IMG/VR virus record: IMGVR_UViG_3300017917_003143
Location: 186,001 to 250,000 of that record
Strand: one strand, 5' to 3'
DNA length: 64,000 nucleotides
The position numbers and the translations under genes are program-made. Below are positions 8,623-24,676 of this stretch, in pieces. Each line of letters starts with the position of its first letter. The stretch's first letter is position 1. Under the pieces are notes generated by a model, which worked only from the letters and a program-made list of their open reading frames with translations, searched no databases and had not been told where the DNA came from.

Positions 8623-9582
8623 ATGAGCAAAACTACTAAGATTCGTTGGGTTATCGCCCATGAGCCTTTGAACCTTTTCATCCGTGCCGCTGAAGACTTT
8701 GAGCGTCGTGTAAACGAGCAACAGAGCGAGCACAAGATCGAAGTTGAAATCATGACTCTCACAGAGTACAGCCAGCGTTACAACGATGGCGTGGTTGTGA
8801 CCAAGCATGACCTACTAGATCTCATGGAAGCAGGCAAGATCGAAATGAGCCAGATGTACACAACATGGCTCGCTGAGAAGTATGAACAAGACTTCTTGGT
8901 GTTCGACCTTCCTTTCTTGTTCAAGGATCACGAGCATGCAACCCGTGTGCTAGAAGGTGAAGTTGGTGAGACTCTTCTCAACAAACTCACAAACAAGTCA
9001 AATGTACGTGGCTTGAGTTTCACATACTCAGGCGGTTTCCGTCAGATGATTTCCAACAAGCAGGTCAGCACACTAGAAGAACTTGCTGGCACACCAGTGC
9101 GTTCAAACCGTAACCCTGTTGCACAAGCAACTATTTCTGCATTGGGCATGAAGCCTGTTGTTGCCGAAGTAGAAGATCTGCGCAAGGTCGTGGTCGAAGG
9201 TGAAGCTGAAGGTGGCGAAACCAACTACCCACGTATGTACCCACTACGTCAGAATGAAGTTACCAAGTCAGTGATTGACACAGGCCACAGCTTGTTCCTC
9301 ACATCAATGATCATTGGTGACAAGTTCTGGGATAGCCTTAGCCCCGAAGTACAGGCTGTGATCAAGCAAGCCGCTATTCTTGCAGGTCGCGAAGAGCGTG
9401 CCGAAACCATCCGTGATGGTGCTCGTGCCGAGCGTCGCCTTGTTGAAGAAGAAGGTGCCAATATCGTTAAGTGGACACAAGAGCAACGTGATGCCGCCAA
9501 GGCCGCGCTGTCAGGTGTTTACGATCAGTTCCGTGACACATTCACACCTGGTCTCATCGAAGCGATTGAGAAGAAGGCTTAA
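8623..9582 (+). CDS. dctP: TRAP transporter substrate-binding protein (DctP family)
   Basis: FDLPFLFKDHEHA; KFWDSLSPEVQAVI motifs. Confidence 0.9.
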   Translation: MSKTTKIRWVIAHEPLNLFIRAAEDFERRVNEQQSEHKIEVEIMTLTEYSQRYNDGVVVTKHDLLDLMEAGKIEMSQMYTTWLAEKYEQDFLVFDLPFLFKDHEHATRVLEGEVGETLLNKLTNKSNVRGLSFTYSGGFRQMISNKQVSTLEELAGTPVRSNRNPVAQATISALGMKPVVAEVEDLRKVVVEGEAEGGETNYPRMYPLRQNEVTKSVIDTGHSLFLTSMIIGDKFWDSLSPEVQAVIKQAAILAGREERAETIRDGARAERRLVEEEGANIVKWTQEQRDAAKAALSGVYDQFRDTFTPGLIEAIEKKA

Positions 9583-9608
9583 TAGGTAGTAATTTTGTAT
9601 TACACAAG

Positions 9609-9634
9609 AAACCCTACCTAGTGTAGGGTTTTTT
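9609..9634 (+). terminator. intrinsic terminator
   Basis: AAACCCTAC-CTAGT-GTAGGGTTT followed by T-run. Confidence 0.85.
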
Positions 9635-9635
9635 G

Positions 9636-9749
9636 TTGACAGCAAAAAGAAAACCGCATACAATCACTGCTGAGATATAAATATCTTCACAACAAGATCA
9701 ACTTTTTGAGCAACCAGGGGTTGACAAGGAATAAATAAACATATACAAT
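9636..9749 (+). promoter_or_regulatory. promoter stack: two sigma70 promoters plus TATAAATA
   Basis: TTGACA 9636/TACAAT 9659; TATAAATA 9676-83; TTGACA 9721/TACAAT 9744; both spacers 17 bp. Confidence 0.85.
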
Positions 9750-9756
9750 AGATGCT

Positions 9757-9873
9757 ATGATGAACACTTTAAGATCATATTCGATATCATTTAAACAGAT
9801 GGAGCCAACAAGTCTCTTGTGGCACCCCACCTGCCTACGTAATGATGCGATTGGGATCGGGGGTTCTGAGTAG
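9757..9873 (+). CDS. 38-aa leaderless leader peptide (attenuator-like)
   Basis: ATG about 7 nt after the -10 box; MMNTLRSYSISFKQMEPTSLLWHPTCLRNDAIGIGGSE-TAG. Confidence 0.5.
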   Translation: MMNTLRSYSISFKQMEPTSLLWHPTCLRNDAIGIGGSE

Positions 9874-9903
9874 AAGTCAGACAGTAAAATATTCTACACA
9901 GGA

Positions 9904-9935
9904 CCCCAGGACTAAACACCCTGGGGTTTCTGTTT
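9904..9935 (+). terminator. terminator (3:4 hairpin of the putative attenuator)
   Basis: CCCCAGG-ACTAAACAC-CCTGGGG-TTTCTGTTT. Confidence 0.75.
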
Positions 9936-9955
9936 GTGCAAAAGGAAAAAAGAAG

Positions 9956-9984
9956 TTGACAGAAAAGATAGATTATAGTAAAAT
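9956..9984 (+). promoter_or_regulatory. sigma70-type promoter
   Basis: TTGACA-17 bp-TAAAAT. Confidence 0.7.
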
Positions 9985-10139
9985 TGCCGATCGTATTGTT
10001 GAACAAGTAGTTGAGCATTCAAGGTTCGTGTTAGACGAACATCAGATGCAACGATTGCTTCAAGGCAAGATTGATCGAGCTCGACGAGAAGTTGAAGCCA
10101 GGGCAACATGCCCAATATGGCATACTGATCGATAGGTCG

Positions 10140-10350
10140 AGCACAGTGGACGTAGGCAACGAGGGCCGTGAGACCACTTTAAAAAAGCTCTAAACGGGCG
10201 GGGTCCTGGATGAAATCCTTGGCGGTAACAAGGAAAGTAAAATAGGCAAGCGGAGGATGTCTCCGCTTTGGCTCTGGCAACAGAGCCCATATTGAAGCAC
10301 ATTGCCGAACAGTCAAATGGCAATAGCCGATGAGTAGTGTGTTTCAATAT
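10140..10350 (+). ncRNA. cluster of GC-rich hairpins, unassigned structured RNA
   Basis: CCTTG/CAAGG, AGCGGAG/CTCCGCT, GGCTCTG/CAGAGCC stems and a terminal ATATTGAAGCAC/GTGTTTCAATAT helix; no credible ORF. Confidence 0.5.
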
Positions 10351-10386
10351 GTCGAACAAGTTTCCAAACGCCGTTAAATAATCGCG

Positions 10387-10983
10387 ATGGAAAACTTAAA
10401 AATAAACAATCCTTTGATCAAAGAAATTTGTCAAAGATTCACGACTCTACAATACAATGATGGCCTGCCAAGCAAAGCAGTAAAATGGGAAGCCAACGAT
10501 GACTATGAAACAGCATCGGCTCAAGCCACAGCAGATCAATCCTTGAGAAACATATTACAAGGGCATCAGCATATAAAAAAGTCTTGCTACAAAATTTTTG
10601 GCGAGACACCTGCTGGAAGCTATTTTCTCAACGAACTTAAAAAACTAATCAAGTATGACAGTTATTACACTGCGGCATACTGGCCAAGAGGATTTATTGG
10701 GTGGCATACAGACAGCGATATAAAAGGACACTGCCTATTATGGACCTGGACTGCTGAAGGACAAGGATTTTTCAAATACAGAGATCCCAACACTGATACG
10801 ATCATCCAAGTCGATGATCAACCAGGTTGGAGCGTCAAGGCCATGCGCCTCGGAGATCAGGACACAGATAGACTGTGGCACTGTGCAGCCGGTGTTGGAT
10901 CAAGATGGTCGTTTGTTTTAATGTACGATGATGATCATACAGATCTTTATCAGAGTGCTAAATCGTTTATTTTATCAAAATAA
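10387..10983 (+). CDS. cupin / 2OG-Fe(II) oxygenase-like protein
   Basis: GWHTD...LWHCA (HxD...H); TAAATA just upstream. Confidence 0.55.
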   Translation: MENLKINNPLIKEICQRFTTLQYNDGLPSKAVKWEANDDYETASAQATADQSLRNILQGHQHIKKSCYKIFGETPAGSYFLNELKKLIKYDSYYTAAYWPRGFIGWHTDSDIKGHCLLWTWTAEGQGFFKYRDPNTDTIIQVDDQPGWSVKAMRLGDQDTDRLWHCAAGVGSRWSFVLMYDDDHTDLYQSAKSFILSK

Positions 10984-10987
10984 TTTA

Positions 10988-11077
10988 GGGGGTTGTTCTC
11001 TACGGCGGACTGTAAATCCGTTGCCTTTAATATGTAGAGTGGCCGGCGATTAGGTTCGATTCCTTCAGCCCCCACCA
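10988..11077 (+). tRNA. atypical tRNA-Tyr (GTA) lacking a canonical D arm
   Basis: Acceptor GGGGGTT/AGCCCCC-A-CCA; GCGGA-CTGTAAA-TCCGT; T loop TTCGATT. Confidence 0.7.
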
Positions 11078-11084
11078 AGTTTAC

Positions 11085-11159
11085 GGTCCTATCGATTAGG
11101 GGTAAAGTCATCGCCCTGTCACGGCGAAGTCACGGGTTCGAATCCCGTTGGGACCGCCA
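11085..11159 (+). tRNA. tRNA-Asp (GTC)
   Basis: Cloverleaf; TCGCC-CTGTCAC-GGCGA; CCA. Confidence 0.95.
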
Positions 11160-11165
11160 GTTTAT

Positions 11166-11242
11166 TCCTCAGTAGCACAGTTGGTAGTTGCGCTTGACTG
11201 TTAATCAAGATGTCGGTGGTTCGAGCCCACCCTGGGGAGCCA
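11166..11242 (+). tRNA. tRNA-Asn (GTT)
   Basis: Cloverleaf; CTTGA-CTGTTAA-TCAAG; CCA. Confidence 0.95.
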
Positions 11243-11244
11243 AG

Positions 11245-12051
11245 TTAGTAAGGCCATTTATAGATATCTTGTATCTTTAATGGAACAGAGTTGACTTTTG
11301 ATTTGTTATACAGTCGGATGATCACTCGTTTGTTTGTTTCACCAAAAGAGTAAAGAGAGTCCGACAGCTCTTGTCTGACAAAATCCGGCACATTTTTTTC
11401 TGAGATTATATCTTCATAGGTAGGCCAATCATCGCCTTGTACATTGATATATTCCTCATAGGTTATGTGTCGCAACTCTTTGGGTGATGGATTTCCGTGA
11501 CATTGTACATAATCGCAAGCGAATCCAAATATCTGGGCGACTTGTAATATCCATGATATGTTTGGTGTACCAATAGGAACTATGTTGCAATTTCCAAATG
11601 CACCGTTGGTATCTACGTGTACACTTTCAAAACTCCAGACCATTTCTGGATTAAGTGATTCTGGTCCGAACACTGTTTCCATCAAACAGTGACTGACATT
11701 GGGATTTAAAATTTGAGAGAAAAATTGGAAATGATTGTGCAAGTGATATAACAATCCTAACACTATCACAGTGTCGCTTTGTTTGACCAATGGTGATATC
11801 AGATCTTTGTCGGTCACATCGCCTACAACAAAATCAATGTTAGAGTGAGTGATTCTTTGTTTGGCTTGCTCTATCAGATGAGATCTGATGTCGACTGCAA
11901 AAACATGTTTGGCACCAAGATTTAAGATATGAGAAGTAGATAGTCCGTTGTTGCAGGCTAAATCTAAGACATTTTTATTTTTGATTATATCAAGATTTTG
12001 TCGTAGATATGTCGACATTGGAATGTTTGAAACAGATTTGATGTCTTGCAT
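11245..12051 (-). CDS. class I SAM-dependent methyltransferase (CmoB-like), antisense inside the tRNA array
   Basis: VLDLACNNG motif I; VIVLGLLYHL; start reassigned to MQDIK at 12051. Confidence 0.8.
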   Translation of the reverse strand: MQDIKSVSNIPMSTYLRQNLDIIKNKNVLDLACNNGLSTSHILNLGAKHVFAVDIRSHLIEQAKQRITHSNIDFVVGDVTDKDLISPLVKQSDTVIVLGLLYHLHNHFQFFSQILNPNVSHCLMETVFGPESLNPEMVWSFESVHVDTNGAFGNCNIVPIGTPNISWILQVAQIFGFACDYVQCHGNPSPKELRHITYEEYINVQGDDWPTYEDIISEKNVPDFVRQELSDSLYSFGETNKRVIIRLYNKSKVNSVPLKIQDIYKWPY

Positions 12052-12093
12052 GATAATAATTATCCAACAACTGATTACTTGAACCAATTTTAT

Positions 12094-12184
12094 GCCCCTG
12101 TAGTTTAATGGTAAAACAGCGGATTTATATCCCGTAGCAACAGATAATTGGTTAATGCAGGTTCGACTCCTGCCGGGGGTACCA
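12094..12184 (+). tRNA. tRNA-Ile (TAT) with 21-nt variable region
   Basis: GCGGA-TTTATAT-CCCGT; GCAGG-TTCGACT-CCTGC; CCA. Confidence 0.75.
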
Positions 12185-12190
12185 GTTAAT

Positions 12191-12267
12191 GTATCGGTAG
12201 TTCCAACTGGCAGAACGACAGTCTCCAAAACTGTATGATGGGGGTTCGAATCCCTCCCGGTACGCCA
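12191..12267 (+). tRNA. tRNA-Trp (CCA)
   Basis: ACAGT-CTCCAAA-ACTGT; CCA. Confidence 0.95.
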
Positions 12268-12273
12268 AATAAT

Positions 12274-12351
12274 GCAACGGTGGCAGAGTGGCCCAATGCA
12301 ACGGATTGCAAATCCGTAAAACCGCTGGTTCAAATCCAGCCCGTTGCTCCA
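12274..12351 (+). tRNA. tRNA-Cys (GCA)
   Basis: ACGGA-TTGCAAA-TCCGT; U73; CCA. Confidence 0.95.
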
Positions 12352-12427
12352 TTTACGTGATGCTTGAACCTGGCCCTGAAAGCCAGTCTGCACTTTTGAC
12401 CTATGCAGGGCCTCTCACAACATTTTA

Positions 12428-12517
12428 GGAAGTGTGGCAGAGTCCGGTTTATTGCACCTGTCTTGAAAACAGACGATCAGAAATGGTCCGTGAGTTCGAA
12501 TCTCACCGCTTCCGCCA
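12428..12517 (+). tRNA. tRNA-Ser (TGA)
   Basis: CTTGAAA loop; long variable arm; G73. Confidence 0.95.
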
Positions 12518-12528
12518 AATAGAAATAC

Positions 12529-12618
12529 GGAGAGGTCCCATAATGGTATTGGAGCGGATTGCTAATCCGTCGACTTGCGAAAGCAGGTTTCTGGGTTCAA
12601 GTCCCAGTCTCTCCGCCA
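12529..12618 (+). tRNA. tRNA-Ser (GCT)
   Basis: TTGCTAA loop; long variable arm; G73. Confidence 0.95.
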
Positions 12619-12619
12619 T

Positions 12620-12697
12620 ACGCCTGTAGCTCAGTTGGACCAGAGTATCACGCTACGAACGTGAGGGCCGGAGGTTCGAATCCTTCCAGGCGTGCCA
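12620..12697 (+). tRNA. tRNA-Arg (ACG)
   Basis: TCACG-CTACGAA-CGTGA; CCA. Confidence 0.95.
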
Positions 12698-12706
12698 GAA
12701 TACGAT

Positions 12707-12783
12707 GGTGTAGTTAGTGTCAGCGGTCAGCACTACGGATTGTGATCCCGTCAGCATGGGTTCGAATCCCATACTACACCCCA
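12707..12783 (+). tRNA. tRNA-His (GTG)
   Basis: G-1:C73; TTGTGAT loop; CCA. Confidence 0.93.
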
Positions 12784-12791
12784 TACAATTT

Positions 12792-12868
12792 GCCCCGGTG
12801 ACGGAATTGGTATACGTGTTGGTCTTAGAAACCAAATTTTAGGAGTTCGAGTCTCCTCTGGGGCACCA
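12792..12868 (+). tRNA. tRNA-Leu (TAG), short variable loop
   Basis: TTGGT-CTTAGAA-ACCAA; 5-nt variable loop; A73. Confidence 0.9.
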
Positions 12869-12874
12869 AACATC

Positions 12875-12958
12875 GCGACTGTGGTGGAATCGGTAGACAC
12901 AGCAGACTTAAAATCTGCCGCTTATAGCGTGCCGGTTCGATTCCGGCCAGTCGCACCA
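12875..12958 (+). tRNA. tRNA-Leu (TAA)
   Basis: GCAGA-CTTAAAA-TCTGC; long variable arm. Confidence 0.95.
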
Positions 12959-12974
12959 TGATATAAGTATTGAT

Positions 12975-13694
12975 ATGAAAAATATTGTCATTGCTGGAGA
13001 TTCTTGGGGTTGCGGCGAATGGGCTGAACAACATGATTCAAGCGACGATCAATATCTGTTACACAAAGGTGTGGCACAATATCTTTCTGACGACGGTCAT
13101 TTTGTTATAAATGTGGCCAAAGGCGGAATCTCTAATTTCCAAGCTGTAGATCGACTTGATAGACTATTGGATCAAATCTGCGATACATCGAAAATAGATT
13201 TTATTCTATTCTTCCAGTCTGAGTGGAGCAGAGACATAGATTTTAGCCAGTTAGATAAGTCATATACAGAATTAAAATCAACTCTAATGTCGAGTGTGTA
13301 TTATACACTCAGCCAGTTGGCCCAGAAGTATCAAGTCAAGATACACCTAATAGGCGGCATGGCTGATACTGTAAAATTAGAGGATTGGAACACAGAATAT
13401 CCTGGTACAGAGATACTGTGCCAAAGCATGTTTAATTTTGTCAAACACAATGACAAAGATATCAATGCTCCTGTGCATGATTGTTTTTTATTATTAGATC
13501 CTGCAAAGATACAACAACTCAAGAGCAAATCTAACATGGACTTAGAAACCATAGTCGATGACATCGACCTGGCAAATACTCGATTAAAAAATCTCCGAGA
13601 CTGCACCGAGCTGTTTTGGCCCGACGGAGTACATGCCAATCGAGTAGCTCATAAAAAATTACATGAGTTAATCAACGAACAATTGATGCAGTAA
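12975..13694 (+). CDS. SGNH/GDSL hydrolase-like protein
   Basis: IAGDSW; DGVHAN C-terminal motif. Confidence 0.75.
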   Translation: MKNIVIAGDSWGCGEWAEQHDSSDDQYLLHKGVAQYLSDDGHFVINVAKGGISNFQAVDRLDRLLDQICDTSKIDFILFFQSEWSRDIDFSQLDKSYTELKSTLMSSVYYTLSQLAQKYQVKIHLIGGMADTVKLEDWNTEYPGTEILCQSMFNFVKHNDKDINAPVHDCFLLLDPAKIQQLKSKSNMDLETIVDDIDLANTRLKNLRDCTELFWPDGVHANRVAHKKLHELINEQLMQ

Positions 13695-13768
13695 TCATAC
13701 AATAAGTTTCGCGAGTACATCAATGCGTCTCCTTGACAGACACGCCGCTTGAGTCTCGCACCCAATAA

Positions 13769-13847
13769 CCGAGTGTAGGAAAGTCTGGTTCAATCCGCCT
13801 GCTTTGGGAGCAGGAGACCGAAGGTTCGAATCCTTCCACTCGGACCA
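13769..13847 (+). tRNA. tRNA-Pro (TGG)
   Basis: CCTGC-TTTGGGA-GCAGG; CCA. Confidence 0.95.
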
Positions 13848-13853
13848 TTTAAT

Positions 13854-13932
13854 GCCCCCTTGGACAAATTGGTAAAGTCGTCTCTCTCAAAAGGAGAAGT
13901 TGTTCTCAGTTCGAATCTGAGAGGGGGTACCA
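13854..13932 (+). tRNA. tRNA-Leu (CAA), short variable region
   Basis: TCTCT-CTCAAAA-GGAGA; 7-nt variable region; A73. Confidence 0.85.
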
Positions 13933-13935
13933 TAT

Positions 13936-14010
13936 GCAGGTATAATTCAGTGGTAGAATGTCTCGTTGCCAACGAGAATGTCGTCGGTTCGAACCCGACT
14001 ACCTGCTCCA
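13936..14010 (+). tRNA. tRNA-Gly (GCC)
   Basis: TCTCG-TTGCCAA-CGAGA; U73. Confidence 0.95.
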
Positions 14011-14015
14011 CACAT

Positions 14016-14092
14016 GCATCCTTAACTCAGCTGGCCAGAGTGCCCTCCTTACAAGTGGGAAGTCGGGAGTTCGAATCTCTCAGGATGCACCA
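14016..14092 (+). tRNA. tRNA-Val (TAC)
   Basis: CTTACAA loop; CCA. Confidence 0.93.
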
Positions 14093-14095
14093 AGT

Positions 14096-14314
14096 TTTGT
14101 TGTAGTGTTAGCAAGAGAAAGACACGCTGGCTAGGTTTCTTCGAAGGACCGAATCAGTAGAAGGTGGCGGGTTCGATGCCCGACGGATCGGAAGATCCGG
14201 GTACATGGTGGCGTACTATCTGGTCCGGTATCCCAAGTAACGTACCGAGTCCTGCCCGGGCTAGTTAATCCAGGTGAATGGTGTCAATAACGATGGTGAC
14301 ACGTCTGCAACAAA
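14096..14314 (+). ncRNA. unassigned ~220-nt structured RNA between tRNA-Val and tRNA-Phe
   Basis: Ends pair (TTTGTTGTAG/CTGCAACAAA); T-loop hairpin CGGG-TTCGATG-CCCG; CGGATC-GGAA-GATCCG; GTGTC/GACAC. Confidence 0.65.
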
Positions 14315-14322
14315 TTCAATAT

Positions 14323-14398
14323 GCCGCTTTAGCTGATGTGGTCATAGCAACGGACTGAAAATCCGTGGAACCCTGTTCGATCCGGGGAGGCGGCACCA
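14323..14398 (+). tRNA. tRNA-Phe (GAA)
   Basis: ACGGA-CTGAAAA-TCCGT; CCA. Confidence 0.95.
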
Positions 14399-14402
14399 AC
14401 AA

Positions 14403-14476
14403 GCCCTATTCGTATAATGGTATTACGTCGGTTTTGTAATCCGAATACGGGAGTTCGATTCTCTCATGGGGCACCA
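14403..14476 (+). tRNA. tRNA-Thr (TGT)
   Basis: TTTGTAA loop; CCA. Confidence 0.93.
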
Positions 14477-14512
14477 TGTTTACCGTTTTGTTGTTTTTGG
14501 ACAACAAGGCAG

Positions 14513-14572
14513 TTGACGATGAAAACACTTTAGCCTACAATAGAGGCTTAGTTAGTTAAATGTTCTTTAAAA
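14513..14572 (+). promoter_or_regulatory. sigma70 promoter followed by a Nus boxA-like element
   Basis: TTGACG-17-TACAAT; TGTTCTTTAAAA at 14561-72. Confidence 0.7.
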
Positions 14573-14590
14573 ATTTAAATGTATAGTCCT

Positions 14591-14699
14591 TATACACATG
14601 AGCACTAAAGGCTAAAGAGCTCGGCCCATGTTGCGGAAACAGCTTCGCCTTTTGGCGTGGTTGGTAGGTTCAATTCCTACAAAGTGTTCAGCTGTATAA
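14591..14699 (+). ncRNA. tRNA-like RNA without CCA or a canonical anticodon loop
   Basis: Acceptor-like GAGCACT/AGTGTTC; T arm GTAGG-TTCAATT-CCTAC; CGCC-TTTT-GGCG arm; outer TATAC/GTATA helix. Confidence 0.55.
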
Positions 14700-15585
14700 G
14701 GATTCGGGGGAGTCTAATCTCCTGTAGGCGGCTTGCCGTCTACGAAGGATAAGTGCCGTGAGGTGCCCAAAGATGCGATGCCTACACAACATCGCCAGCA
14801 ATGGTCCATTTAGACAAGCCTGCTCACACCCGTGAGGGTGCGTTCACTGAGAAGACCGGTGGATGTAACAGCAAAGCTGATGTAGTGGAAAGAACGCTGA
14901 TCGACAGGCCGCAAGGAACCTGGGTCGGTGGAAAGTAACAGGTGGTGCTGACTTCACTACAAAACCAATCAGTCAACTGGTATGAGAAAGGGTAGTGTGT
15001 TGGTCCGAAGGGTCGCTCCTAAGGGCTGGCATGCAGTATTAGTGGTCCGTGGGTTGCGTCGTGAGACGTGGCACATAGGTCGCAAAATACGACTGAGTAA
15101 TCCGCGAGATGAAAGGTACGTGGTGTGTTGTATTCTGCATTCCAAAAGAGTGTGGAGCAACTGAGGCAGCACATCATTGTAGGTTCGATATAGCCTAATG
15201 GTAGGGCGATTTCCTTCTAAGAAATAGACTGTTGGTTCGACTCCAACTATCAAACAAAAACGCAAAGACTGCCTCGGTCACGTGTGAAAAGCATCTAACG
15301 CTTCAGCCGTAAGGTAATGAAGTCAGACGTAGCTCGCAAGGTGAAATCTGTTTATGCTGGAAGTTTCGTAAGGTGTTAGCGCACCTGAATGGCTCGCAAG
15401 GTCAACGGAGAAGAAAGCGTAGAGTAGCATGTGATGTCAAGACTACTGCCTGTCTTTAAACGGCGATGCTGGTAGCAGACCGAGATACCGCAAGGGTTTC
15501 GGTGGATGTCAGGAGAAGGTACGCTCGCAAGGTGTACTATAATGCCTGAGGTGTTACTGGGCAAGGTGTAATCTCAGCCTTCCAC
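14700..15585 (+). ncRNA. giant structured ncRNA, probably GOLLD
   Basis: About 890 nt without a credible ORF; many GNRA-capped hairpins (CGCAAG, CGTGAG, CGTAAG); sits in a phage tRNA array; ends at a terminator. Family assigned from size, context and recalled 3' motif, not from a covariance search. Confidence 0.7.
15184..15256 (+). tRNA. tRNA-Arg (TCT)-like cloverleaf embedded in the giant ncRNA
   Basis: TTCGATA/TATCAAA acceptor with one mismatch; ATTTC-CTTCTAA-GAAAT; GTTGG-TTCGACT-CCAAC; no CCA. Confidence 0.7.
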
Positions 15586-15592
15586 AATCAAC

Positions 15593-15615
15593 AAAACCGC
15601 TCCGGCGGTTTTTTC
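15593..15615 (+). terminator. intrinsic terminator after the giant ncRNA
   Basis: AAAACCGC-TCCG-GCGGTTTT followed by T-run. Confidence 0.85.
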
Positions 15616-15624
15616 TTTTTCTGT

Positions 15625-15698
15625 TCGGGTGTAGTGTAATGGTAACACCACAGACTTTGACTCTGTTATTCTAGGTTCGAGCCCTAGCACCCGTGCCA
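15625..15698 (+). tRNA. tRNA-Gln (TTG)
   Basis: ACAGA-CTTTGAC-TCTGT; CCA. Confidence 0.93.
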
Positions 15699-15700
15699 TT

Positions 15701-15774
15701 GCTCCTATAGGTAAATGGTATACCGACGCCATGGTAAGGCGTAATTCTAAGTTCGATCCTTGGTGGGAGCACCA
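15701..15774 (+). tRNA. tRNA-Thr (GGT)
   Basis: ACGCC-ATGGTAA-GGCGT; CCA. Confidence 0.9.
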
Positions 15775-15826
15775 GGATTTTTAAAGGAGAGACTGTCATG
15801 TCTAGTGACAAGAGTGACAAACTGTT

Positions 15827-15901
15827 GGGGGTGTGGTGAAATGGTATCACAGCAGACTTTTAATCTGCCAATTTCGGGTTCGAGTCCCGGCGCCCCTACC
15901 A
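15827..15901 (+). tRNA. tRNA-Lys (TTT)
   Basis: GCAGA-CTTTTAA-TCTGC; CCA. Confidence 0.95.
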
Positions 15902-15959
15902 TATAAAAACACATTACTAAGAGTCCATATTCAGAGCGTGGCATAGTGTGTTTCTATAT
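15901..15959 (+). repeat. spacer hairpin element, second copy of 10289-10350
   Basis: ATATAAAAACACATT...TAGTGTGTTTCTATAT. Confidence 0.7.
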
Positions 15960-16035
15960 GGTAACGTAGCATAGCGGCTAATGCACCACCTTCATACGGT
16001 GTTTATCGTGGGTTCGAGTCCCACCGTTACTACCA
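15960..16035 (+). tRNA. tRNA-Met (CAT, elongator)
   Basis: TTCATAC loop; G1:U72 paired. Confidence 0.85.
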
Positions 16036-16039
16036 ATTT

Positions 16040-16115
16040 CCGCCCGTAGTCTAATGGATAAGGCAACGGTCTTCTACACCGTCAGATGTGGGTTCGACTC
16101 CTGCCGGGCGGGCCA
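16040..16115 (+). tRNA. tRNA-Arg (TCT)
   Basis: ACGGT-CTTCTAC-ACCGT; CCA. Confidence 0.93.
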
Positions 16116-16121
16116 AAAATA

Positions 16122-16196
16122 CGGCCCTTAGTTCAATGGATAGAATGCGATGCTTCGAACTTCGAGATGTGGGTTCGATTCCTGCAGGGCCGGCCA
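16122..16196 (+). tRNA. tRNA-Arg (TCG)
   Basis: CTTCGAA loop; CCA. Confidence 0.9.
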
Positions 16197-16200
16197 AATC

Positions 16201-16274
16201 GCTCGGATAGTTAAATGGTATAACGGTCGCTTGATAAGCGATTATTCCAAGTTCAATTCTTGGTCTGAGCACCA
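16201..16274 (+). tRNA. tRNA-Ile (GAT)
   Basis: GTCGC-TTGATAA-GCGAT; CCA. Confidence 0.93.
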
Positions 16275-16370
16275 AAAATATTTGCCAAACTTGTCAACGA
16301 GCGTGTGGTCTACGGCGTTATATGTATAGCACATCACAAATTGTGCTGTTTCTAAACAAAGGAGAACTTT

Positions 16371-16568
16371 ATGAAACTCGTAGCTACACTAATCGCAAGT
16401 TTGTTCGCTGTATCCGCTTTCGCACAGGCACCTGCTGCCAAGAAAGAAGAAGCCAAGCCAGCCGCGGCTGCTCCAGCACCTGCTGCCAAGCCAGCAGAGA
16501 AAAAAGCTGAGCCTGCCAAAAGCGACGCTAAAAAAGACGACAAAAAAGCCGACGCTCCTAAGAAGTAA
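16371..16568 (+). CDS. secreted Ala/Lys/Pro-rich small protein
   Basis: AAGGAG SD; signal peptide ending AFA; PAAKK/PAEKK repeats. Confidence 0.85.
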   Translation: MKLVATLIASLFAVSAFAQAPAAKKEEAKPAAAAPAPAAKPAEKKAEPAKSDAKKDDKKADAPKK

Positions 16569-16755
16569 TCCTGCTCATGTCATCGTACTCACGTTGGATG
16601 ACAGTGAGTACGAGTTTGAAGGAGATGATTACCTACATGTAGGATATCGAAGACCTGAACTGATCCATGTTTACTTTGACGAAGATGTTGAACTAAGCGA
16701 TCATGTAAAGTTTAGGTTATGGCTTGCCAGACAACTGGCGTTAAAGAAGTACAAG

Positions 16756-16785
16756 GAAACCTGGGGATGACCCGGGTTTCTTTTT
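16756..16785 (+). terminator. intrinsic terminator
   Basis: GAAACCTGGG-GATGA-CCCGGGTTTC-TTTTT. Confidence 0.7.
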
Positions 16786-16859
16786 GGGGGATTAGTTAAA
16801 TGGGATAACATCGGCTTTGCAAGCCGAGATTGAGAGTTCGATTCTCTCATCCTCCACCA
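16786..16859 (+). tRNA. tRNA-Ala (TGC)
   Basis: G3:U70; TTTGCAA loop; CCA. Confidence 0.95.
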
Positions 16860-16864
16860 AACAC

Positions 16865-16893
16865 TTGACAGTCACTAAATATTTTAGTAAAAT
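16865..16893 (+). promoter_or_regulatory. sigma70-type promoter
   Basis: TTGACA-17-TAAAAT. Confidence 0.75.
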
Positions 16894-16914
16894 AAAGTAT
16901 CCAAGGAGACTGCG

Positions 16915-17076
16915 ATGCAACAAGAAAAAACACCAGTGCCACAATATTTTTTCTCTCCCGGAGAATGGGATAGATTAGGATGCGGACCATTGCCGCCTGA
17001 GCGCAATCGTGATTTACAGAAAGCCATGGAACGCAGTGTTGAACACAAAGAAGACACAGGCAAAGGATATAACTGA
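16915..17076 (+). CDS. small hypothetical protein (53 aa)
   Basis: AAGGAG SD; MQQEKTPVPQYFFSPGEWDRLGCG. Confidence 0.7.
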   Translation: MQQEKTPVPQYFFSPGEWDRLGCGPLPPERNRDLQKAMERSVEHKEDTGKGYN

Positions 17077-17304
17077 TGGGATGGATAGCAGTATTGATTA
17101 TTGGTTGTTTGGTCGTTTATTTCATGGTCAAAAGCAAAGATCATGAAAACGATGAGTAAATAAGATTACTATGCGAGAGTATGCACCCAGCGGCGCTCCT
17201 GGATCTGCTGGCAATGTTGATGTGGTGAGAGGCCACAGGTCGCGCGAAGACCGTACATGTCTCGATAGTTTCGTGAACTGCCTACAACGCCCAAGACAGT
17301 AGGA

Positions 17305-17673
17305 GTTAGCCGAAAGGCCATGCGGGCATTATTGTTGTAATCCCTTCAAAACGAAGGCATGTTGGACGTGGGTTCGATTCCCACCAGGTCCACCAAAAGA
17401 GGATTAAAGTATGGATGACGATTTGGCAAGATTTGCGATGGGTATGGTAGCTGTGATCGTCATTGGAGCCATAGTCCTTTTCTGATGGGCCTGACCAGGT
17501 TTCGACAGCGTGAGATAGTGGAGACGGCAACACGGCAAAGCAGAAGCCGTAGGATTGGGGATTCCCGGTCGTAGAAGCAAAAAAAAGTAAACGCAAATGA
17601 TGAGGTTTACGCTTTAGCCGCTTGATCGGTTAAATGAGGATTCCCAGGTGTTCCTTATCACCCAAACACCTGG
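17305..17673 (+). ncRNA. ssrA: circularly permuted (two-piece) tmRNA
   Basis: T arm and acceptor 3' strand CAGGTCC-A-CCA end at 17395, upstream of the 5' end GGGCCTGACCAGGTTTCGAC at 17487 (G3:U70); tag frame 17593-17625 ANDEVYALAA-TGA; 5' boundary approximate. Confidence 0.92.
17411..17485 (+). CDS. 24-aa hydrophobic micro-protein inside the tmRNA intervening segment
   Basis: GAGGA SD; MDDDLARFAMGMVAVIVIGAIVLF-TGA. Confidence 0.6.
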   Translation: MDDDLARFAMGMVAVIVIGAIVLF

Positions 17674-17722
17674 TTGACTTCTTTTGTTTTTTCTCGTATA
17701 ATTACACATTCGCTCTTTAATA
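17674..17722 (+). promoter_or_regulatory. sigma70 promoter plus boxA-like element
   Basis: TTGACT-17-TATAAT; CGCTCTTTAATA at 17711-22. Confidence 0.8.
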
Positions 17723-17736
17723 ATTGACAGCATTAT

Positions 17737-17811
17737 GCTCGGTTCGTCTATCGGTCAGGACACCGCCCTTTCACGGCGGGAAGAGGGGTTCGATTCCCCT
17801 ACCGAGTACCA
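17737..17811 (+). tRNA. tRNA-Glu (TTC)
   Basis: CCGCC-CTTTCAC-GGCGG; CCA. Confidence 0.95.
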
Positions 17812-17942
17812 TAAGAAAACTCTTTGAAGTGTGGCTACACTGGAGAACAGTAAACTTCCGATGAAACCGGTCGAAGGAAGAACCTGCCAGGAAGATACGG
17901 AGCTATACAGTCGGGTTCGATTCCTGCAAAGAGTTTTCTTAT
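17811..17942 (+). ncRNA. Y RNA (YrlA)-like tRNA mimic
   Basis: 15-bp terminal helix ATAAGAAAACTCTTT/AAAGAGTTTTCTTAT; T loop GGG-TTCGATT-CCT; CTTCC/GGAAG stem carrying GTCGAAGG. Confidence 0.5.
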
Positions 17943-17944
17943 GG

Positions 17945-18405
17945 TAAGTGATGTGAGAGAAAGTGGTTAGTCACCACCCCGATTGCCAGGGGATGACACC
18001 ACCCTCGACCGCTGTGGGCCGCAAGGACCATGATCGTTTGACTAACGATCGAACACATGTTGGAGGGGAGATGGTAGCCAGGATACGCAATGAGCTCGAC
18101 GTGCTCGCGATCGTTGTAGGTTACGCACTCTTAAACACGCAGGCAGTATCGCTATCCATAATCTACATAGACTCAACAGTGATGCATTATTATATTCCTG
18201 GTGCTACTATAAGCTGGGGCCACTCACTGCTATGTTTAGCGACGCTAGATCGATCCGAGTATCCGGTAGTTTTCTAGCCTCTCGCAACCCCAATCGGTCT
18301 GGGCTAAACTCTGTGCTCTGTATGATCGGCCTCGACAGCTGGTCCTCTGCATCGCAGGTCACTGAGCATCAACACAGACTCCGCATAATCGTAAGCGGAA
18401 CTAAC
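17945..18405 (+). ncRNA. unassigned large (~460 nt) structured RNA
   Basis: Several local hairpins and three long-range complementarities (see findings); lies between RNA genes; no credible ORF. Confidence 0.6.
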
Positions 18406-18408
18406 AAT

Positions 18409-18483
18409 CGCGGAGTATATCAGTGGCAGATGGCGAGTCTCATAAGCTCGAGGTCAGTGGTTCGAATCCACTCTCCGCAACCA
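18409..18483 (+). tRNA. tRNA-fMet (CAT)-like
   Basis: C1:A72 mismatch; CTCATAA loop; anticodon stem lacks the usual three G-C pairs. Confidence 0.8.
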
Positions 18484-18488
18484 AAAAT

Positions 18489-18562
18489 GCAGGGTTCGTA
18501 TAGTGGTAATACCTCAGCCTTCCAAGCTGATGCGGAGAGTTCGATTCTCTTACCCTGCTCCA
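18489..18562 (+). tRNA. tRNA-Gly (TCC)
   Basis: TCAGC-CTTCCAA-GCTGA; U73. Confidence 0.95.
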
Positions 18563-18564
18563 GA

Positions 18565-18800
18565 ACGTTCCGTTGTCAACGGATAGTGCGACCCGCACGA
18601 TGAGAAGTGAGCTGACACTCACGGGTGGTCCCAGTCTAACCCTAACTGGCGCTGGCAATGCGTTAATCCCAGAGACGGCAAGCGGATGCCTCGGTGGCCT
18701 TAGACTATCCTGCTGAGGGGGCGGAAACCGATGGGCGGATGTTGTAATAACCAACCAGGATGCCACAGGCGCTTAAAATGACCGCGGTCTCTGGCGAAGC
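18565..18800 (+). ncRNA. unassigned structured RNA upstream of rpoZ
   Basis: TCCGTT/AACGGA, GTGAG/CTCAC, CCAGT/ACTGG hairpins; CCAGAGAC 18669 pairs with GTCTCTGG 18787. Confidence 0.5.
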
Positions 18801-18820
18801 TTTTATAAAGGAAAAATAGC

Positions 18821-19048
18821 ATGGCAAGAATCACATCAGAAAAAGCAGTACAAGCAGTAGGTAACCGTTACGATCTAATCTTGGTCGCTAGCCGACGTGC
18901 CCGTGAGTTGTCTAACGGTCATGCTCCTCATATCACAACCAATGATACCACAGTGGTCAAGGCCATTAGAGAAATTGAGCAAGGCCATATCGGTCGAGAT
19001 TATCTTTACAAGAGCCAAGACATCGAGCGAAAAAAGACAAAATCCTAG
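18821..19048 (+). CDS. rpoZ: RNA polymerase omega subunit
   Basis: MARITSEKAVQAVGNRYDLILVASRRAREL...VKAIREIEQG. Confidence 0.92.
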   Translation: MARITSEKAVQAVGNRYDLILVASRRARELSNGHAPHITTNDTTVVKAIREIEQGHIGRDYLYKSQDIERKKTKS

Positions 19049-19079
19049 ATTTTTGCCAAAAGAGATATATACACATATT

Positions 19080-19514
19080 ATGCTGTCATTCATTCACGAA
19101 CTAACTGATCCACTGTTAGATTATCTCAAGGACGATCCTGTGCGCCCGGATATCCCTCGCGAGTTCCGTGTAAGTGGAAAAAGGTTTGTCAGTGCCTTGG
19201 TAGAAGATCAGCCCAAGGCCATGGTTTGTGTAAGTTTGCATGACTTTGTTCCTGCCACAGTAGAAGATCTTGCACGTGATCCGCAAGAACCCAACACAGC
19301 TATATTCTACACCATTTGGAGCTATGTTCCTGGAGCCGCTGGCGAACTCCTGTTTGCCACAGTAGACGAAATCCGTCGACAGTTTCCCACTGTCAAACGC
19401 TTTGTGACACTGAGCCCAAAAACTGAAATGGCCCGACGCTTCCATATCAAAAATGGTGCTCAAGTTTTCAGAGAAAACGACAGCACTGTAAACTACGAAT
19501 ATATACTTGCATGA
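19080..19514 (+). CDS. GNAT-fold protein resembling the malonyl-CoA decarboxylase C-terminal domain
   Basis: AIFYTIWS...FVTLSP motifs. Confidence 0.5.
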   Translation: MLSFIHELTDPLLDYLKDDPVRPDIPREFRVSGKRFVSALVEDQPKAMVCVSLHDFVPATVEDLARDPQEPNTAIFYTIWSYVPGAAGELLFATVDEIRRQFPTVKRFVTLSPKTEMARRFHIKNGAQVFRENDSTVNYEYILA

Positions 19515-19678
19515 GCAAGTTCACAGACACTCTGAAAGCCGCTCTAGAGAAAAAACATGCCGCGGCTCATCCTGACACTAAGTCTGACTCAAAAGACGAT
19601 GGTAAATCAAAAACCAAACGAGCAGTTCCTGTGATCACAGGGAAACCTGTTAAAAAGGTCACTGGACGTGGACGCTAG
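19511..19678 (+). CDS. small basic protein (55 aa)
   Basis: Overlapping start; ends ...KKVTGRGR-TAG. Confidence 0.65.
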   Translation: MSKFTDTLKAALEKKHAAAHPDTKSDSKDDGKSKTKRAVPVITGKPVKKVTGRGR

Positions 19679-19806
19679 TATTTGGGATTTACCCTGGTGG
19701 CAATTGGGTTGGGGATTAGCAGTGGTGGCCAACTATGTGTATTGGTGCATCATCTACTCCCAAATCTTTGATTGACCTAAAATACCATTTCTAGTATAAT
19801 ACTAGC

Positions 19807-20163
19807 ATGGATTTTTACATAGACGAAGCGTATCTCACTGATGTCACGATACGGACTGAATATCCTCGCTACGATAATCGAACGGATCTTACCCCAGAAG
19901 AACTACTGGACATAATCAAGAATCCTACAGCGATGACTTCGATATCTAACAAAGATCATCCTGAATTTACCTATCTGCGAGAGCAGTTAGAACAACAAGG
20001 CTTCATAAAAGTCGAGCGTGGTTGGTGGAATGGAGATCGTGTATTAAAAACATTTCAATTAAATGATGTTGAGTTTAAAAAGCACAGTCAGTTTCCATGT
20101 GCCTCGGCTATGAAGCATCATTTAAAGTTTGCAAAACTATATAAACAAAAGAAAGGAGCATAA
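19807..20163 (+). CDS. hypothetical protein
   Basis: ORF after promoter TTGACC-17-TATAAT (19772-19800). Confidence 0.75.
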   Translation: MDFYIDEAYLTDVTIRTEYPRYDNRTDLTPEELLDIIKNPTAMTSISNKDHPEFTYLREQLEQQGFIKVERGWWNGDRVLKTFQLNDVEFKKHSQFPCASAMKHHLKFAKLYKQKKGA

Positions 20164-20164
20164 G

Positions 20165-20752
20165 ATGCCTAGTGTATTTTTAGTCAGCGACACGCACTTT
20201 GGTCACGCAGGTGTCTGTCGCTTCACACGTAACGATGGTGTTACAAAACTTCGACCTTGGACAGATCCCGACGAAATGGACGAAGCCATGGTCCGGGCCT
20301 GGAACGAAAGAGTCCGGCCCACAGACAAGGTTTACCACTTGGGAGACGTCGTGATCAACCGCAAGGCGTTAAAAACTCTTGCTCGCTTGAATGGAGACAA
20401 AGTTTTGATCCGCGGTAACCATGACATCTTCCCAGATGTGGAATATCGAGAATACTTCCGTGAACTACGTGCTTATCATGTTATGAACGGAATGATATTG
20501 AGTCATATTCCTATCCATCCAGAAAGCCTGGGTCGCTTTGGAGTAAACATTCACGGTCACTTGCATGCCAATCGTGTAATGGTGCCATTGGCAACCAGTG
20601 GAGTTCTTGATCGGATTGACACAAGATATCACTGTGTGTGCGTGGAACAGACTCCAGACTTTGCACCTATCCTGTTTGAAGATGTTATCAAACGCATCGA
20701 AGCAGAAGGTGGTGTAGTAGGTTTTCAAAATGGCAATGGTCCCACAATGTAA
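20165..20752 (+). CDS. calcineurin-like metallophosphoesterase
   Basis: SDTHFGH, HLGD, GNHD, HGHLH. Confidence 0.93.
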   Translation: MPSVFLVSDTHFGHAGVCRFTRNDGVTKLRPWTDPDEMDEAMVRAWNERVRPTDKVYHLGDVVINRKALKTLARLNGDKVLIRGNHDIFPDVEYREYFRELRAYHVMNGMILSHIPIHPESLGRFGVNIHGHLHANRVMVPLATSGVLDRIDTRYHCVCVEQTPDFAPILFEDVIKRIEAEGGVVGFQNGNGPTM

Positions 20753-20762
20753 GGAGAGTATT

Positions 20763-20912
20763 ATGCCGATGTACGAAGCAACTGTAAGAACGCCCGAAGG
20801 CGAAAAGAAAGATCGTGTGTATGCCAAGGATTTACAAGAAGCACGACAACTGTTGGAACAGCGGCATGGTCCTAGGAATGTTCCTTATCAGCCACATATA
20901 ATTCCCAGTTAG
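20763..20912 (+). CDS. small hypothetical protein
   Basis: AAGGAG SD; MPMYEATVRTP... Confidence 0.7.
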   Translation: MPMYEATVRTPEGEKKDRVYAKDLQEARQLLEQRHGPRNVPYQPHIIPS

Positions 20913-21045
20913 GTGTCGATCAGCCTCGCTCACTTGGCCGACGTCAATAAGTGCCGATAGCGAAATGATCGGGTGACGATTACCGCGAGGTAACAAGAGC
21001 CGCAGAAACCAAATGTCTGCGCCGGACTGGGTAACCGGCATACAT
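20913..21045 (+). ncRNA. five-hairpin intergenic RNA candidate
   Basis: CACTT/AAGTG, CCGAT/ATCGG, TTACC-GCGA-GGTAA, GCAGA/TCTGC, GCCGG/CCGGC. Confidence 0.5.
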
Positions 21046-21050
21046 ACTCC

Positions 21051-22226: not shown

Positions 22227-22288
22227 TCTTGATTGTTGCATTATCAACTACGATAATGTATAATTACTAACTTAGAGCGAGGATAAAA

Positions 22289-22486
22289 ATGTCAAAAAAA
22301 CTCAACCGTAAGAAACCAGGATACACCAAAAGTGGCGAAATCAAGATCGTTAGCTTGAACTCGAAACAATTGACTGAGCTGATGGAAAAAACACAGCAAA
22401 AGAAAAAACGTGCCAAGATACAACGTAGGATTTGGCAACTGACTGGTCAACCAATGGTCGCAGTCTCTGACATATCCGCAGAGTAA
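22289..22486 (+). CDS. small basic protein
   Basis: GAGGA SD; ORF track. Confidence 0.7.
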   Translation: MSKKLNRKKPGYTKSGEIKIVSLNSKQLTELMEKTQQKKKRAKIQRRIWQLTGQPMVAVSDISAE

Positions 22487-22492
22487 AATCAC

Positions 22493-22566
22493 GCCCTGTT
22501 AGTTAAATGGTATAACAGTTGATTTGTAATCATCAATTGGCAGTTCGATTCTGTCACGGGGCACCA
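22493..22566 (+). tRNA. tRNA-Thr (TGT), second copy outside the array
   Basis: TTTGTAA loop; CCA. Confidence 0.9.
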
Positions 22567-22585
22567 ACCAACACAAAGGAAACCT

Positions 22586-22744: not shown

Positions 22745-22752
22745 AGACCCAG

Positions 22753-22789
22753 CATGGGGCATGTGTTGTTAAATACCACATGCTTCATG
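22753..22789 (+). promoter_or_regulatory. start-codon-occluding hairpin with TAAATA in its loop
   Basis: CATGGGGCATGTG/CACATGCTTCATG; TAAATA 22770-75; ATG 22780. Confidence 0.6.
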
Positions 22790-24620: not shown

Positions 24621-24637
24621 ATCAAGAACGTACAATC

Positions 24638-24670: not shown

Positions 24671-24676
24671 TGACTT

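What the first reader, a model, noticed from the sequence alone, without database searches (positions are those of the whole stretch)
14700..15585. Giant GOLLD-like RNA with a tRNA-Arg(UCU) cloverleaf nested inside
Seen: about 890 nt of GNRA-capped hairpins with its own promoter, boxA-like element and terminator. A near-complete tRNA (15184-15256) without CCA sits inside it, although a separate intact Arg(TCT) tRNA exists at 16040. Established: GOLLD RNAs are about 800-nt RNAs of unknown function from phage and lake metagenomes, located near tRNAs. Inference: the nested tRNA may be a processing site that splits the RNA, or a displayed decoy.
Basis: partly seen in the sequence, partly recalled or inferred. 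Interest (0 to 1): 0.7.

Follow-up and report, generated by a model that had tools for sequence, protein, structure and literature searches.

The report
Phage GOLLD RNA with caged tRNA mimic
This stretch of a 344-kb freshwater jumbo phage encodes a genuine member of the known GOLLD family of giant cage-forming RNAs, and the tRNA inside it looks like a permanently tethered tRNA look-alike, a feature already described for the family, rather than a working tRNA gene.

Summary
Window 14701-15585 (+) is a GOLLD RNA: Rfam RF02032 scores 220.9 bits against a cut-off of 150 over 15120-15580. The 5' half (14701-15119), which Rfam does not model, is conserved with strong covariation in more than 20 related phage loci. 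A tRNA-shaped module with anticodon UCU (15183-15256) sits in the unpaired linker. This is a published feature of GOLLD, whose linker faces the inside of a 12-14-mer RNA cage.

Comparison adds detail. About 87 of 93 related linkers carry the same module lineage. None of 80 modules has CCA, against 97% of 1,335 free tRNAs in the same loci. The acceptor stem is weak and AU-rich. The anticodon flips among GUU, UUU, CUU, UCU and UGU. In a relative, RNA contigs run straight through the module.

The module is therefore most likely a retained tRNA mimic, not a processing site. The promoter, a conserved boxA-like element, a leader helix and the terminator are real. This is a new member of a known kind, of moderate interest.

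The parts
14513..14541 (+). sigma-70-type promoter, TTGACG-17 nt-TACAAT
   Evidence: Matches 10 of 12 consensus positions. A GTTGACA-N17-TACAAT promoter sits at the same aligned position in at least 8 divergent relatives. 19 of 83 related upstream regions have a promoter followed by boxA.
14561..14573 (+). boxA-like element TGTTCTTTAAAAA (candidate NusB/NusE antitermination site)
   Evidence: Two mismatches to E. coli rrn boxA. The core GTTCTTTAAAAA is kept, with at most 1 mismatch, in 27 of 83 unique upstream regions of related GOLLDs while the flanks diverge. It is the only copy in the phage genome that lies behind a promoter. Its function is inferred, not shown.
14585..14704 (+). leader helix (5' strand about 14585-14606, 3' strand about 14683-14704) enclosing a cloverleaf-like pseudo-tRNA; its 3' strand abuts the start of GOLLD
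   Evidence: The MFE fold of 14548-14712 is -50.4 kcal/mol. Helix variants between loci are compensatory: TCCTTATACA/TGTATAAGGA, TTCTTATACA/TGTATAAGAA and TCTTTATATA/TATATAAAGA. Most boxA-bearing loci have a contiguous helix of 10-24 bp. ARAGORN calls the insert only at a relaxed threshold. A role in processing is inferred.
14701..15119 (+). GOLLD 5' domain (not covered by the Rfam model)
   Evidence: Conservation starts at about 14698. The consensus structure of 14701-15182 has 130 pairs, 86 with compensatory changes, in 23 sequences. Relatives' RNA contigs cover from about 14717.
15120..15180 (+). long hairpin closing the 5' half (Rfam GOLLD model positions 1-61)
   Evidence: Rfam alignment. 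Its sequence motif was used to retrieve more than 119 related loci.
15183..15256 (+). tRNA-shaped module with anticodon UCU in the linker (J13/15): no CCA, AU-rich 8-bp acceptor stem with a C.A mismatch, U at position 20
   Evidence: ARAGORN and Rfam tRNA at 62.5 bits. It lies in the unpaired model positions of about 62-139. The same lineage occurs in about 87 of 93 related linkers.
15257..15580 (+). GOLLD conserved 3' domain
   Evidence: Rfam RF02032 model positions of about 140-416. 90 consensus pairs, 61 with compensatory changes.
15593..15620 (+). intrinsic terminator (8-bp stem plus T-run)
   Evidence: No relatives' RNA is laid beyond about 15587.

Best explanation
Window 14701-15585 is the gene of a GOLLD RNA (Rfam RF02032) in the tRNA island of a 344-kb freshwater jumbo phage.

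Shown here:
- It is a full-length, two-domain structured RNA under strong structural selection.
- Close relatives of it are abundant in freshwater RNA libraries, with coverage limited to the GOLLD body.
- The linker between the two domains holds a tRNA-shaped module.

Taken from published cryo-EM of other GOLLDs, not tested here:
- Such RNAs assemble by themselves into closed 12- to 14-mer cages.
- The linker points into the cage interior.

Inferred: the module is not an ordinary tRNA-Arg gene. It belongs to a lineage that travels with the GOLLD backbone. That lineage keeps the tRNA core (D, anticodon and T arms and the elbow nucleotides). It has lost what a maturable, chargeable tRNA needs: there is no CCA, the outer acceptor stem is weak, the Arg identity base A20 is missing, and the anticodon flips among relatives. 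It stays covalently inside the RNA. Each cage would therefore carry a dozen or so tethered tRNA mimics inside.

More speculative: these mimics bind or distract a tRNA-recognising factor rather than feed translation.

Inferred transcription route: the RNA starts at the promoter at 14513-14541. It passes a boxA-like antitermination element and a leader helix that is trimmed off. It ends at the terminator at 15593-15620.
For: - Family identity: Rfam GOLLD 220.9 bits against a cut-off of 150. Thirteen relatives tested, including those without a tRNA, score 166-214 bits.
- Structure: compensatory changes in 86 of 130 and 61 of 90 consensus pairs.
- Module lineage: present in about 87 of 93 unique linkers, in the same register, with an invariant 5' flank GTAGGTT.
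- Module core: the three core stems are 97-100% paired with several pair types. U8, A14, G18-G19, U33, T54-T55-C56 and A58 are 92-100% conserved.
- Module acceptor end: CCA in 0 of 80 modules against 1,299 of 1,335 free tRNAs. A fully paired 7/7 stem in 11% against 85%. A mean of 0.85 G:C pairs against 4.4.
- Anticodon: it changes at least 35 times on the backbone tree. The window's module shares its anticodon stem with Lys(UUU) modules of relatives.
- Redundancy: a proper tRNA-Arg(UCU) lies 800 nt downstream.
- RNA evidence: in run X19, exact-match contigs of relative L011 tile only the GOLLD body, with nothing in the flanks. One contig (7676-7803, depth 136) covers the whole module, next to contigs of depth 157 and 48. 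Junction-spanning pieces and loose ends also appear on the window itself.
- Cage and interior-facing linker: PMC12286853 and PMC12990946.
- Leader.
Against: - No RNA data come from this phage itself. The RNA evidence is from Logan contigs of relatives (about 76% identical for L011). Their depths mix strains and cannot give the fraction of molecules cut.
- Cage assembly is taken from homologues whose 5' domains differ. I could not compare the 5' domain with the published P1-P12 consensus.
- Six relatives lack the module, so it is dispensable for GOLLD as such.
- A host CCA-adding enzyme could still complete an excised tRNA.
- A tRNA buried inside a closed cage is not obviously reachable by proteins.
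- The identity-element arguments (A20 for ArgRS, U35 for LysRS) rest on E. coli knowledge, not on the unknown host.
Confidence: 0.7

Rival explanations
1. The nested element is a working tRNA-Arg(UCU) gene. RNase P and a 3' nuclease cut it out, the host adds CCA, and GOLLD is thereby split into separate 5' and 3' RNAs that may still assemble.
For: The cloverleaf scores well (62.5 bits) and ARAGORN calls it. The core stems and tertiary nucleotides are conserved. Published structures show that the 5' and 3' domains fold separately and are joined by few contacts. Depth dips over the module in some RNA runs.
Against: - CCA is absent from all 80 modules, in phages that encode it on 97% of their free tRNAs.
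- The phage has no CCA-adding enzyme gene.
- The outer acceptor pairs hold in only 20-58% of modules.
- A20 is absent, and a canonical Arg(UCU) tRNA lies nearby.
- The anticodon changes at least 35 times while the body stays the same.
- The dip is explained by sequence divergence, because loose ends continue into other tRNA sequences. It disappears when an exact-match relative is used.
- A published northern blot found no expression of the embedded pseudo-tRNA in a Mycobacterium GOLLD (PMC6582537).
Confidence: 0.15
2. The module is an evolutionary relic. A tRNA gene of the surrounding array was trapped in the variable linker and now serves only as a tolerated spacer with no tRNA-related role.
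For: GOLLD lies inside tRNA arrays. Six relatives do without the module. Some anticodon loops are degenerate (ATTGTCC, TTTATCC, an 8-nt loop). The acceptor stem is decayed.
Against: The three core stems stay 97-100% paired through many compensatory changes, and the elbow nucleotides stay 92-100% conserved, across 83 unique sequences whose GOLLD backbones differ by up to about 50%. This points to continued selection for the tRNA shape. The decay is confined to the acceptor end and the anticodon.
Confidence: 0.12
3. The region is not one RNA gene. It is a chance cluster of hairpins, or a protein-coding stretch, next to a stray tRNA.
For: A mechanical 98-aa ORF lies on the minus strand at 14969-15265.
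Against: The Rfam E-value is 3.4e-61. There are more than 140 covarying pairs. More than 119 homologous loci exist. RNA coverage is limited to the element.
Confidence: 0.01

Closest known systems
GOLLD RNA (Rfam RF02032); solved examples are the env-38 14-mer (PDB 9MEE) and the Streptococcus agalactiae 12-mer (PDB 9L0R)
   Same: Full-length match of the 3' domain to the family model. A size of about 885 nt. Two-domain layout with a variable linker. Location in a phage tRNA island. Many GNRA-type loops.
   Different: The 5' domain belongs to a freshwater jumbo-phage clade and was not compared with the published P1-P12. Assembly state is untested. In this clade the linker almost always holds a tRNA-like module, whereas env-38 has a disordered linker of about 40 nt.
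Mycobacterium/Mycolicibacterium GOLLD with an embedded (pseudo)tRNA, reported as tRNA-Phe in J13/15 (PMC6582537; Morgado 2020 as cited in PMC12990946)
   Same: A tRNA-like element inside the same linker, inside a tRNA array. The embedded element was judged a pseudo-tRNA and was not detected as a separate RNA.
   Different: A different anticodon class (Phe GAA there; mostly Asn, Lys, Arg and Thr here). Different hosts. I could not read the Morgado paper.
ROOL RNA nanocages
   Same: Phage-associated, close to tRNA islands, self-assembling cage with an interior-facing variable linker.
   Different: Unrelated sequence and fold. No ROOL match in the window.
Viral tRNA-like structures and phage tRNAs that blunt tRNA-cleaving defences (T5 tRNA variants against PARIS AriB; PMC12409363, PMC10264068)
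   Same: A tRNA shape carried by a virus. The dominant anticodons GUU, UUU and UGU match the reported AriB target set. The modules almost never have U39, the base whose change makes T5 tRNA-Lys uncleavable.
   Different: Those are free, chargeable tRNAs. This module is tethered inside a large RNA, lacks CCA, and has no shown interaction with any nuclease.
rRNA operon leaders (boxA antitermination plus processing stem)
   Same: The same order of elements: promoter, boxA-like element, then a long helix flanking the mature RNA.
   Different: Here the helix closes before the mature RNA rather than around it. NusB/NusE binding and the processing nuclease are untested.

Membership tests
GOLLD RNA (RF02032) | Covariance-model score above the curated gathering threshold over the conserved 3' domain | tested here: met
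   220.9 bits against 150, model positions 1-416, E 3.4e-61.
GOLLD RNA (RF02032) | Large size (about 800 nt) with a less conserved 5' domain and a conserved 3' domain | tested here: met
   885 nt between the conservation boundaries. The 5' part has 86 of 130 covarying pairs. The 3' part has 61 of 90.
GOLLD RNA (RF02032) | 5' domain with the published P1-P12 architecture | not tested
   Rfam holds no model of it (one search found nothing). I had no usable reference for the published sequences.
GOLLD RNA (RF02032) | Encoded in phages or prophages, next to tRNA genes | tested here: met
   The source is a 343,632-bp virus record. 32 tRNAs and a tmRNA surround the RNA.
GOLLD RNA (RF02032) | Variable linker between the domains, sometimes holding a tRNA | tested here: met
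   The tRNA-like module lies in the unpaired model positions of about 62-139. Literature.
GOLLD RNA (RF02032) | Self-assembly into a closed homo-oligomeric cage | not testable with these tools
   Known only from cryo-EM of env-38 and S. agalactiae GOLLD.
GOLLD RNA (RF02032) | Expressed as an abundant RNA | tested here: inconclusive
   Relatives are abundant in freshwater RNA libraries, with coverage confined to the element. No data exist for this phage itself.
Functional tRNA-Arg(UCU) gene | Cloverleaf with conserved tertiary nucleotides | tested here: met
   Rfam tRNA 62.5 bits, ARAGORN call, conservation table.
Functional tRNA-Arg(UCU) gene | Stable 7-bp acceptor stem and a 3' CCA, encoded as on the phage's other tRNAs | tested here: not met
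   The stem is AU-rich with a C.A mismatch and no CCA follows. CCA is found in 0 of 80 modules against 97% of free tRNAs.
Functional tRNA-Arg(UCU) gene | Arginine identity elements (A20 with C35), as known from E. coli ArgRS | tested here: not met
   Position 20 is U. The body matches Lys(UUU) modules of relatives. The identity rule comes from my own knowledge of E. coli.
Functional tRNA-Arg(UCU) gene | Released from its precursor | tested here: inconclusive
   In relatives, RNA contigs span the module at the depth of its flanks. No data exist for this phage, and partial excision cannot be excluded.

The most novel reading that the evidence does not exclude
The tethered tRNA mimics are bait for host tRNA-cleaving immune nucleases. 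Each GOLLD cage would present a dozen or so uncleavable look-alikes of the tRNAs that such nucleases attack (Asn-GUU, Lys-UUU/CUU, Thr-UGU, Arg-UCU). The anticodon would flip quickly because phage and defence are in an arms race. GOLLD would then be an RNA-only anti-defence device, and its long-unknown function would become directly testable.
Probability: 0.12. Interest if true: 0.85.

Novelty: new member of a known kind. Interest (0 to 1): 0.38.

Why it matters
GOLLD has been known since 2009 and was shown in 2025 to form RNA-only cages, yet its function is still unknown. This locus is an ordinary member of the family. Its relatives, however, give a large natural series (more than 90 distinct linkers) showing that, in this clade, the embedded tRNA is a selected, non-maturing tRNA mimic with a fast-changing anticodon. 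Its expression unit also looks like that of a stable RNA, with boxA and a leader helix. These features narrow the hypotheses about what the cage holds. They also point to a cultured relative, Sinorhizobium phage Phosso, in which they can be tested.

Tried and rejected
- A BLAST search of the region against 50,697 phage records gave a single distant hit, Phosso. Pattern scans of IMG/VR were needed to find relatives.
- From the first 36 loci I suspected that anticodon position 36 is always U, which would mean a t6A-type loop. The larger set rejected this: UCC, UGG, UGA, UUC and AUG occur, and U36 stands at 92%.
- The boxA-like match is not significant within the window alone. It is accepted only because of its conservation among relatives.
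- The TATAAG just before the RNA first looked like a -10 element. Compensatory changes show it is the 3' strand of the leader helix. Some relatives do have a true promoter at that position.
- I looked by eye for complementarity between the invariant GTAGGTT flank and a 3'-domain loop, which would be the published J13/15-L20 kissing contact. It held in many relatives but not in the window or Phosso, so I make no claim.
- A search for palindromic loops as a sign of self-association was inconclusive.
- No known RNA family matches the leader or the 5' domain.
- The genome shows no TAG or TGA recoding, and has no CCA-adding enzyme or RtcB.
- The Morgado 2020 paper is not held in the library.
- No raw-read RNA runs were available, so molecule ends could not be mapped.

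Full report
**What is there.** The window is bases 186001-250000 of a 343,632-bp virus record judged 99% complete, that is, a jumbo phage. Rfam's GOLLD model (RF02032) matches 15120-15580 on the plus strand over its full length, at 220.9 bits against a gathering score of 150 and E 3.4e-61. That model covers only the conserved 3' half of GOLLD.

For the 5' half I collected relatives from IMG/VR with two short motifs. One motif gave 36 loci and the other gave more than 119. Thirteen of these were tested and all are GOLLD by Rfam, at 166-214 bits. Across 28 full-length relatives, conservation begins at about 14698 and ends at about 15585.

The consensus fold of 14701-15182 has 130 pairs, 86 with compensatory changes. 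The fold of 15256-15585 has 90 pairs, 61 with compensatory changes. The single sequence folds better than all 20 shuffles, with z = -2.5. This is a real structured RNA of about 885 nt.

**Its expression signals.** A TTGACG-17-TACAAT promoter lies at 14513-14541 and a clean intrinsic terminator at 15593-15612. The boxA-like TGTTCTTTAAAAA at 14561-14573 is not remarkable inside the window alone. However, the promoter, the core GTTCTTTAAAAA and a following long helix recur in the same order upstream of many related GOLLDs whose flanks have diverged. Of 83 unique upstream regions, 27 have the boxA-like core. Of those 27, 19 also have the promoter, and most have a contiguous helix of 10-24 bp.

The helix pairs about 14585-14606 with about 14683-14704 and shows compensatory variants between loci. 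Its 3' strand ends exactly where GOLLD conservation starts. It encloses a degenerate cloverleaf. Other relatives instead have a consensus promoter directly at the GOLLD start. In the phage's own genome, only the GOLLD leader copy of the boxA-like motif lies behind a promoter. That the element acts in antitermination, and that the helix is a processing stem, are inferences by analogy with rRNA operons.

**RNA evidence.** No run holds this phage itself. Many freshwater, estuary and aquaculture metatranscriptomes hold close relatives. Laid on the window at 85% identity or more, RNA-library contigs cover about 14717 to about 15545 at word depths up to 10^4-10^5. There is none over the leader and none beyond the terminator. 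The neighbouring tRNAs reach depths of only 0-26.

Laid at 95% or more on relative L011, exact-match contigs of run X19 tile 7230 to about 8040 only, with no coverage of the flanks. This argues for RNA rather than contaminating DNA. These are assembler contigs, so molecule ends and cut fractions cannot be read from them.

**The nested tRNA.** ARAGORN and Rfam both call 15183-15256 as a tRNA with anticodon UCU. It lies in the unpaired linker of the model. This is not new. [quoted passage not shown]

Comparison across relatives gives the following picture.

- About 87 of 93 unique linkers carry a tRNA-like module in the same register, behind an invariant GTAGGTT. Six have a short linker instead.
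- In 83 unique modules the D, anticodon and T stems are 97-100% paired with several pair types. The elbow and core nucleotides are 92-100% conserved. The outer acceptor pairs hold in only 20-58%.
- None of 80 modules is followed by CCA, against 1,299 of 1,335 free tRNAs in the same loci. Full 7/7 acceptor pairing occurs in 11% against 85%. The mean number of G:C pairs is 0.85 against 4.4.
- The anticodon is mostly GUU, UUU or CUU, with UCU in the window, Phosso and three others, UGU in a few, and single odd ones. On a tree of the GOLLD backbone it changes at least 35 times.
- The window's module shares its anticodon stem with Lys(UUU) modules of relatives and has U rather than A at position 20. 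By E. coli identity rules it would be a poor substrate for either ArgRS or LysRS. That rule is my own knowledge, not a tool result.
- A canonical tRNA-Arg(UCU) with a GCCA end lies at 16040-16115, and the phage encodes no CCA-adding enzyme.
- In run X19 one exact-match contig (L011 7676-7803, depth 136) spans the entire module (7702-7775), between neighbouring contigs of depth 157 and 48. In run X20 the module bins (9,500-13,400) are no lower than their flanks.

**Interpretation.** The module is best read as a tRNA mimic that remains part of the RNA. By homology with solved GOLLD cages, it would sit in about a dozen copies inside the assembled particle. The relic idea is contradicted by the selection on the tRNA core.

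What the mimic is for remains unknown. The most interesting possibility is bait for tRNA-cleaving defence nucleases. The reported targets of PARIS AriB are Lys-UUU, Thr-UGU and Asn-GUU (PMC12409363). U39, which AriB needs in E. coli tRNA-Lys, occurs in only 2% of modules. This is a coincidence of lists, not evidence of interaction, and I give it about one chance in eight.

**Verdict.** This is a new member of the known GOLLD family carrying an already described feature. The clade-wide properties of the module and the rRNA-like leader are useful additions. They do not make it a new kind of element.

Noticed in passing
window 17269-17716 (+): The phage carries a permuted (two-piece) tmRNA with tag ANDEVYALAA. 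It matches Rfam beta_tmRNA (124 bits) and tmRNA_permuted (128.8 bits). The related locus L102 has one too (2136-2594).
   Followed up: partly
window 2959-3033 (+): A tRNA with anticodon CUA (amber-suppressor type, labelled Pyl by ARAGORN). Genome-wide ORF coverage gives no sign of TAG or TGA recoding.
   Followed up: partly
window 2959-22566 (+): All 32 tRNAs of the 344-kb genome lie in this one island on one strand. Nearly all free tRNAs of this phage group encode their own CCA (97% of 1,335). The genome has no CCA-adding enzyme or RtcB, but has one RNA-ligase-family ORF at genome 32720-33268.
   Followed up: partly
window 5214-9582 and 21051-26014 (+), 44110-45597 (-): The phage holds host-like genes: a Gram-negative porin, TctA and TctC transporter parts, a DctP solute-binding protein, AhpC, a CMD-family protein, a radical SAM enzyme and a carbamoyltransferase. 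Together with the beta-type tmRNA, these suggest a freshwater betaproteobacterial host.
   Followed up: no
window 12094-12184 (+): A tRNA of 88-91 nt, called Ile(tat), with the length of a long-variable-arm tRNA. Its anticodon assignment may be wrong.
   Followed up: no
L021 5559-5751: A group I intron match (Rfam 52.7 bits against a cut-off of 50) inside the tRNA array of a related phage contig.
   Followed up: no
relatives aligned to window 15586-15620: Most relatives share a conserved tail (CACTATTATAAAACACATT-like) right after GOLLD. The window lacks it and has an intrinsic terminator in its place.
   Followed up: no
L001 (Sinorhizobium phage Phosso, PV764938.1) 3044-3512: This cultured 469-kb phage has an unannotated GOLLD (186.6 bits) with a UCU tRNA-like module whose acceptor stem is largely lost. 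ARAGORN does not call it, while Rfam tRNA scores 54 bits. It offers an experimental system for this clade.
   Followed up: partly
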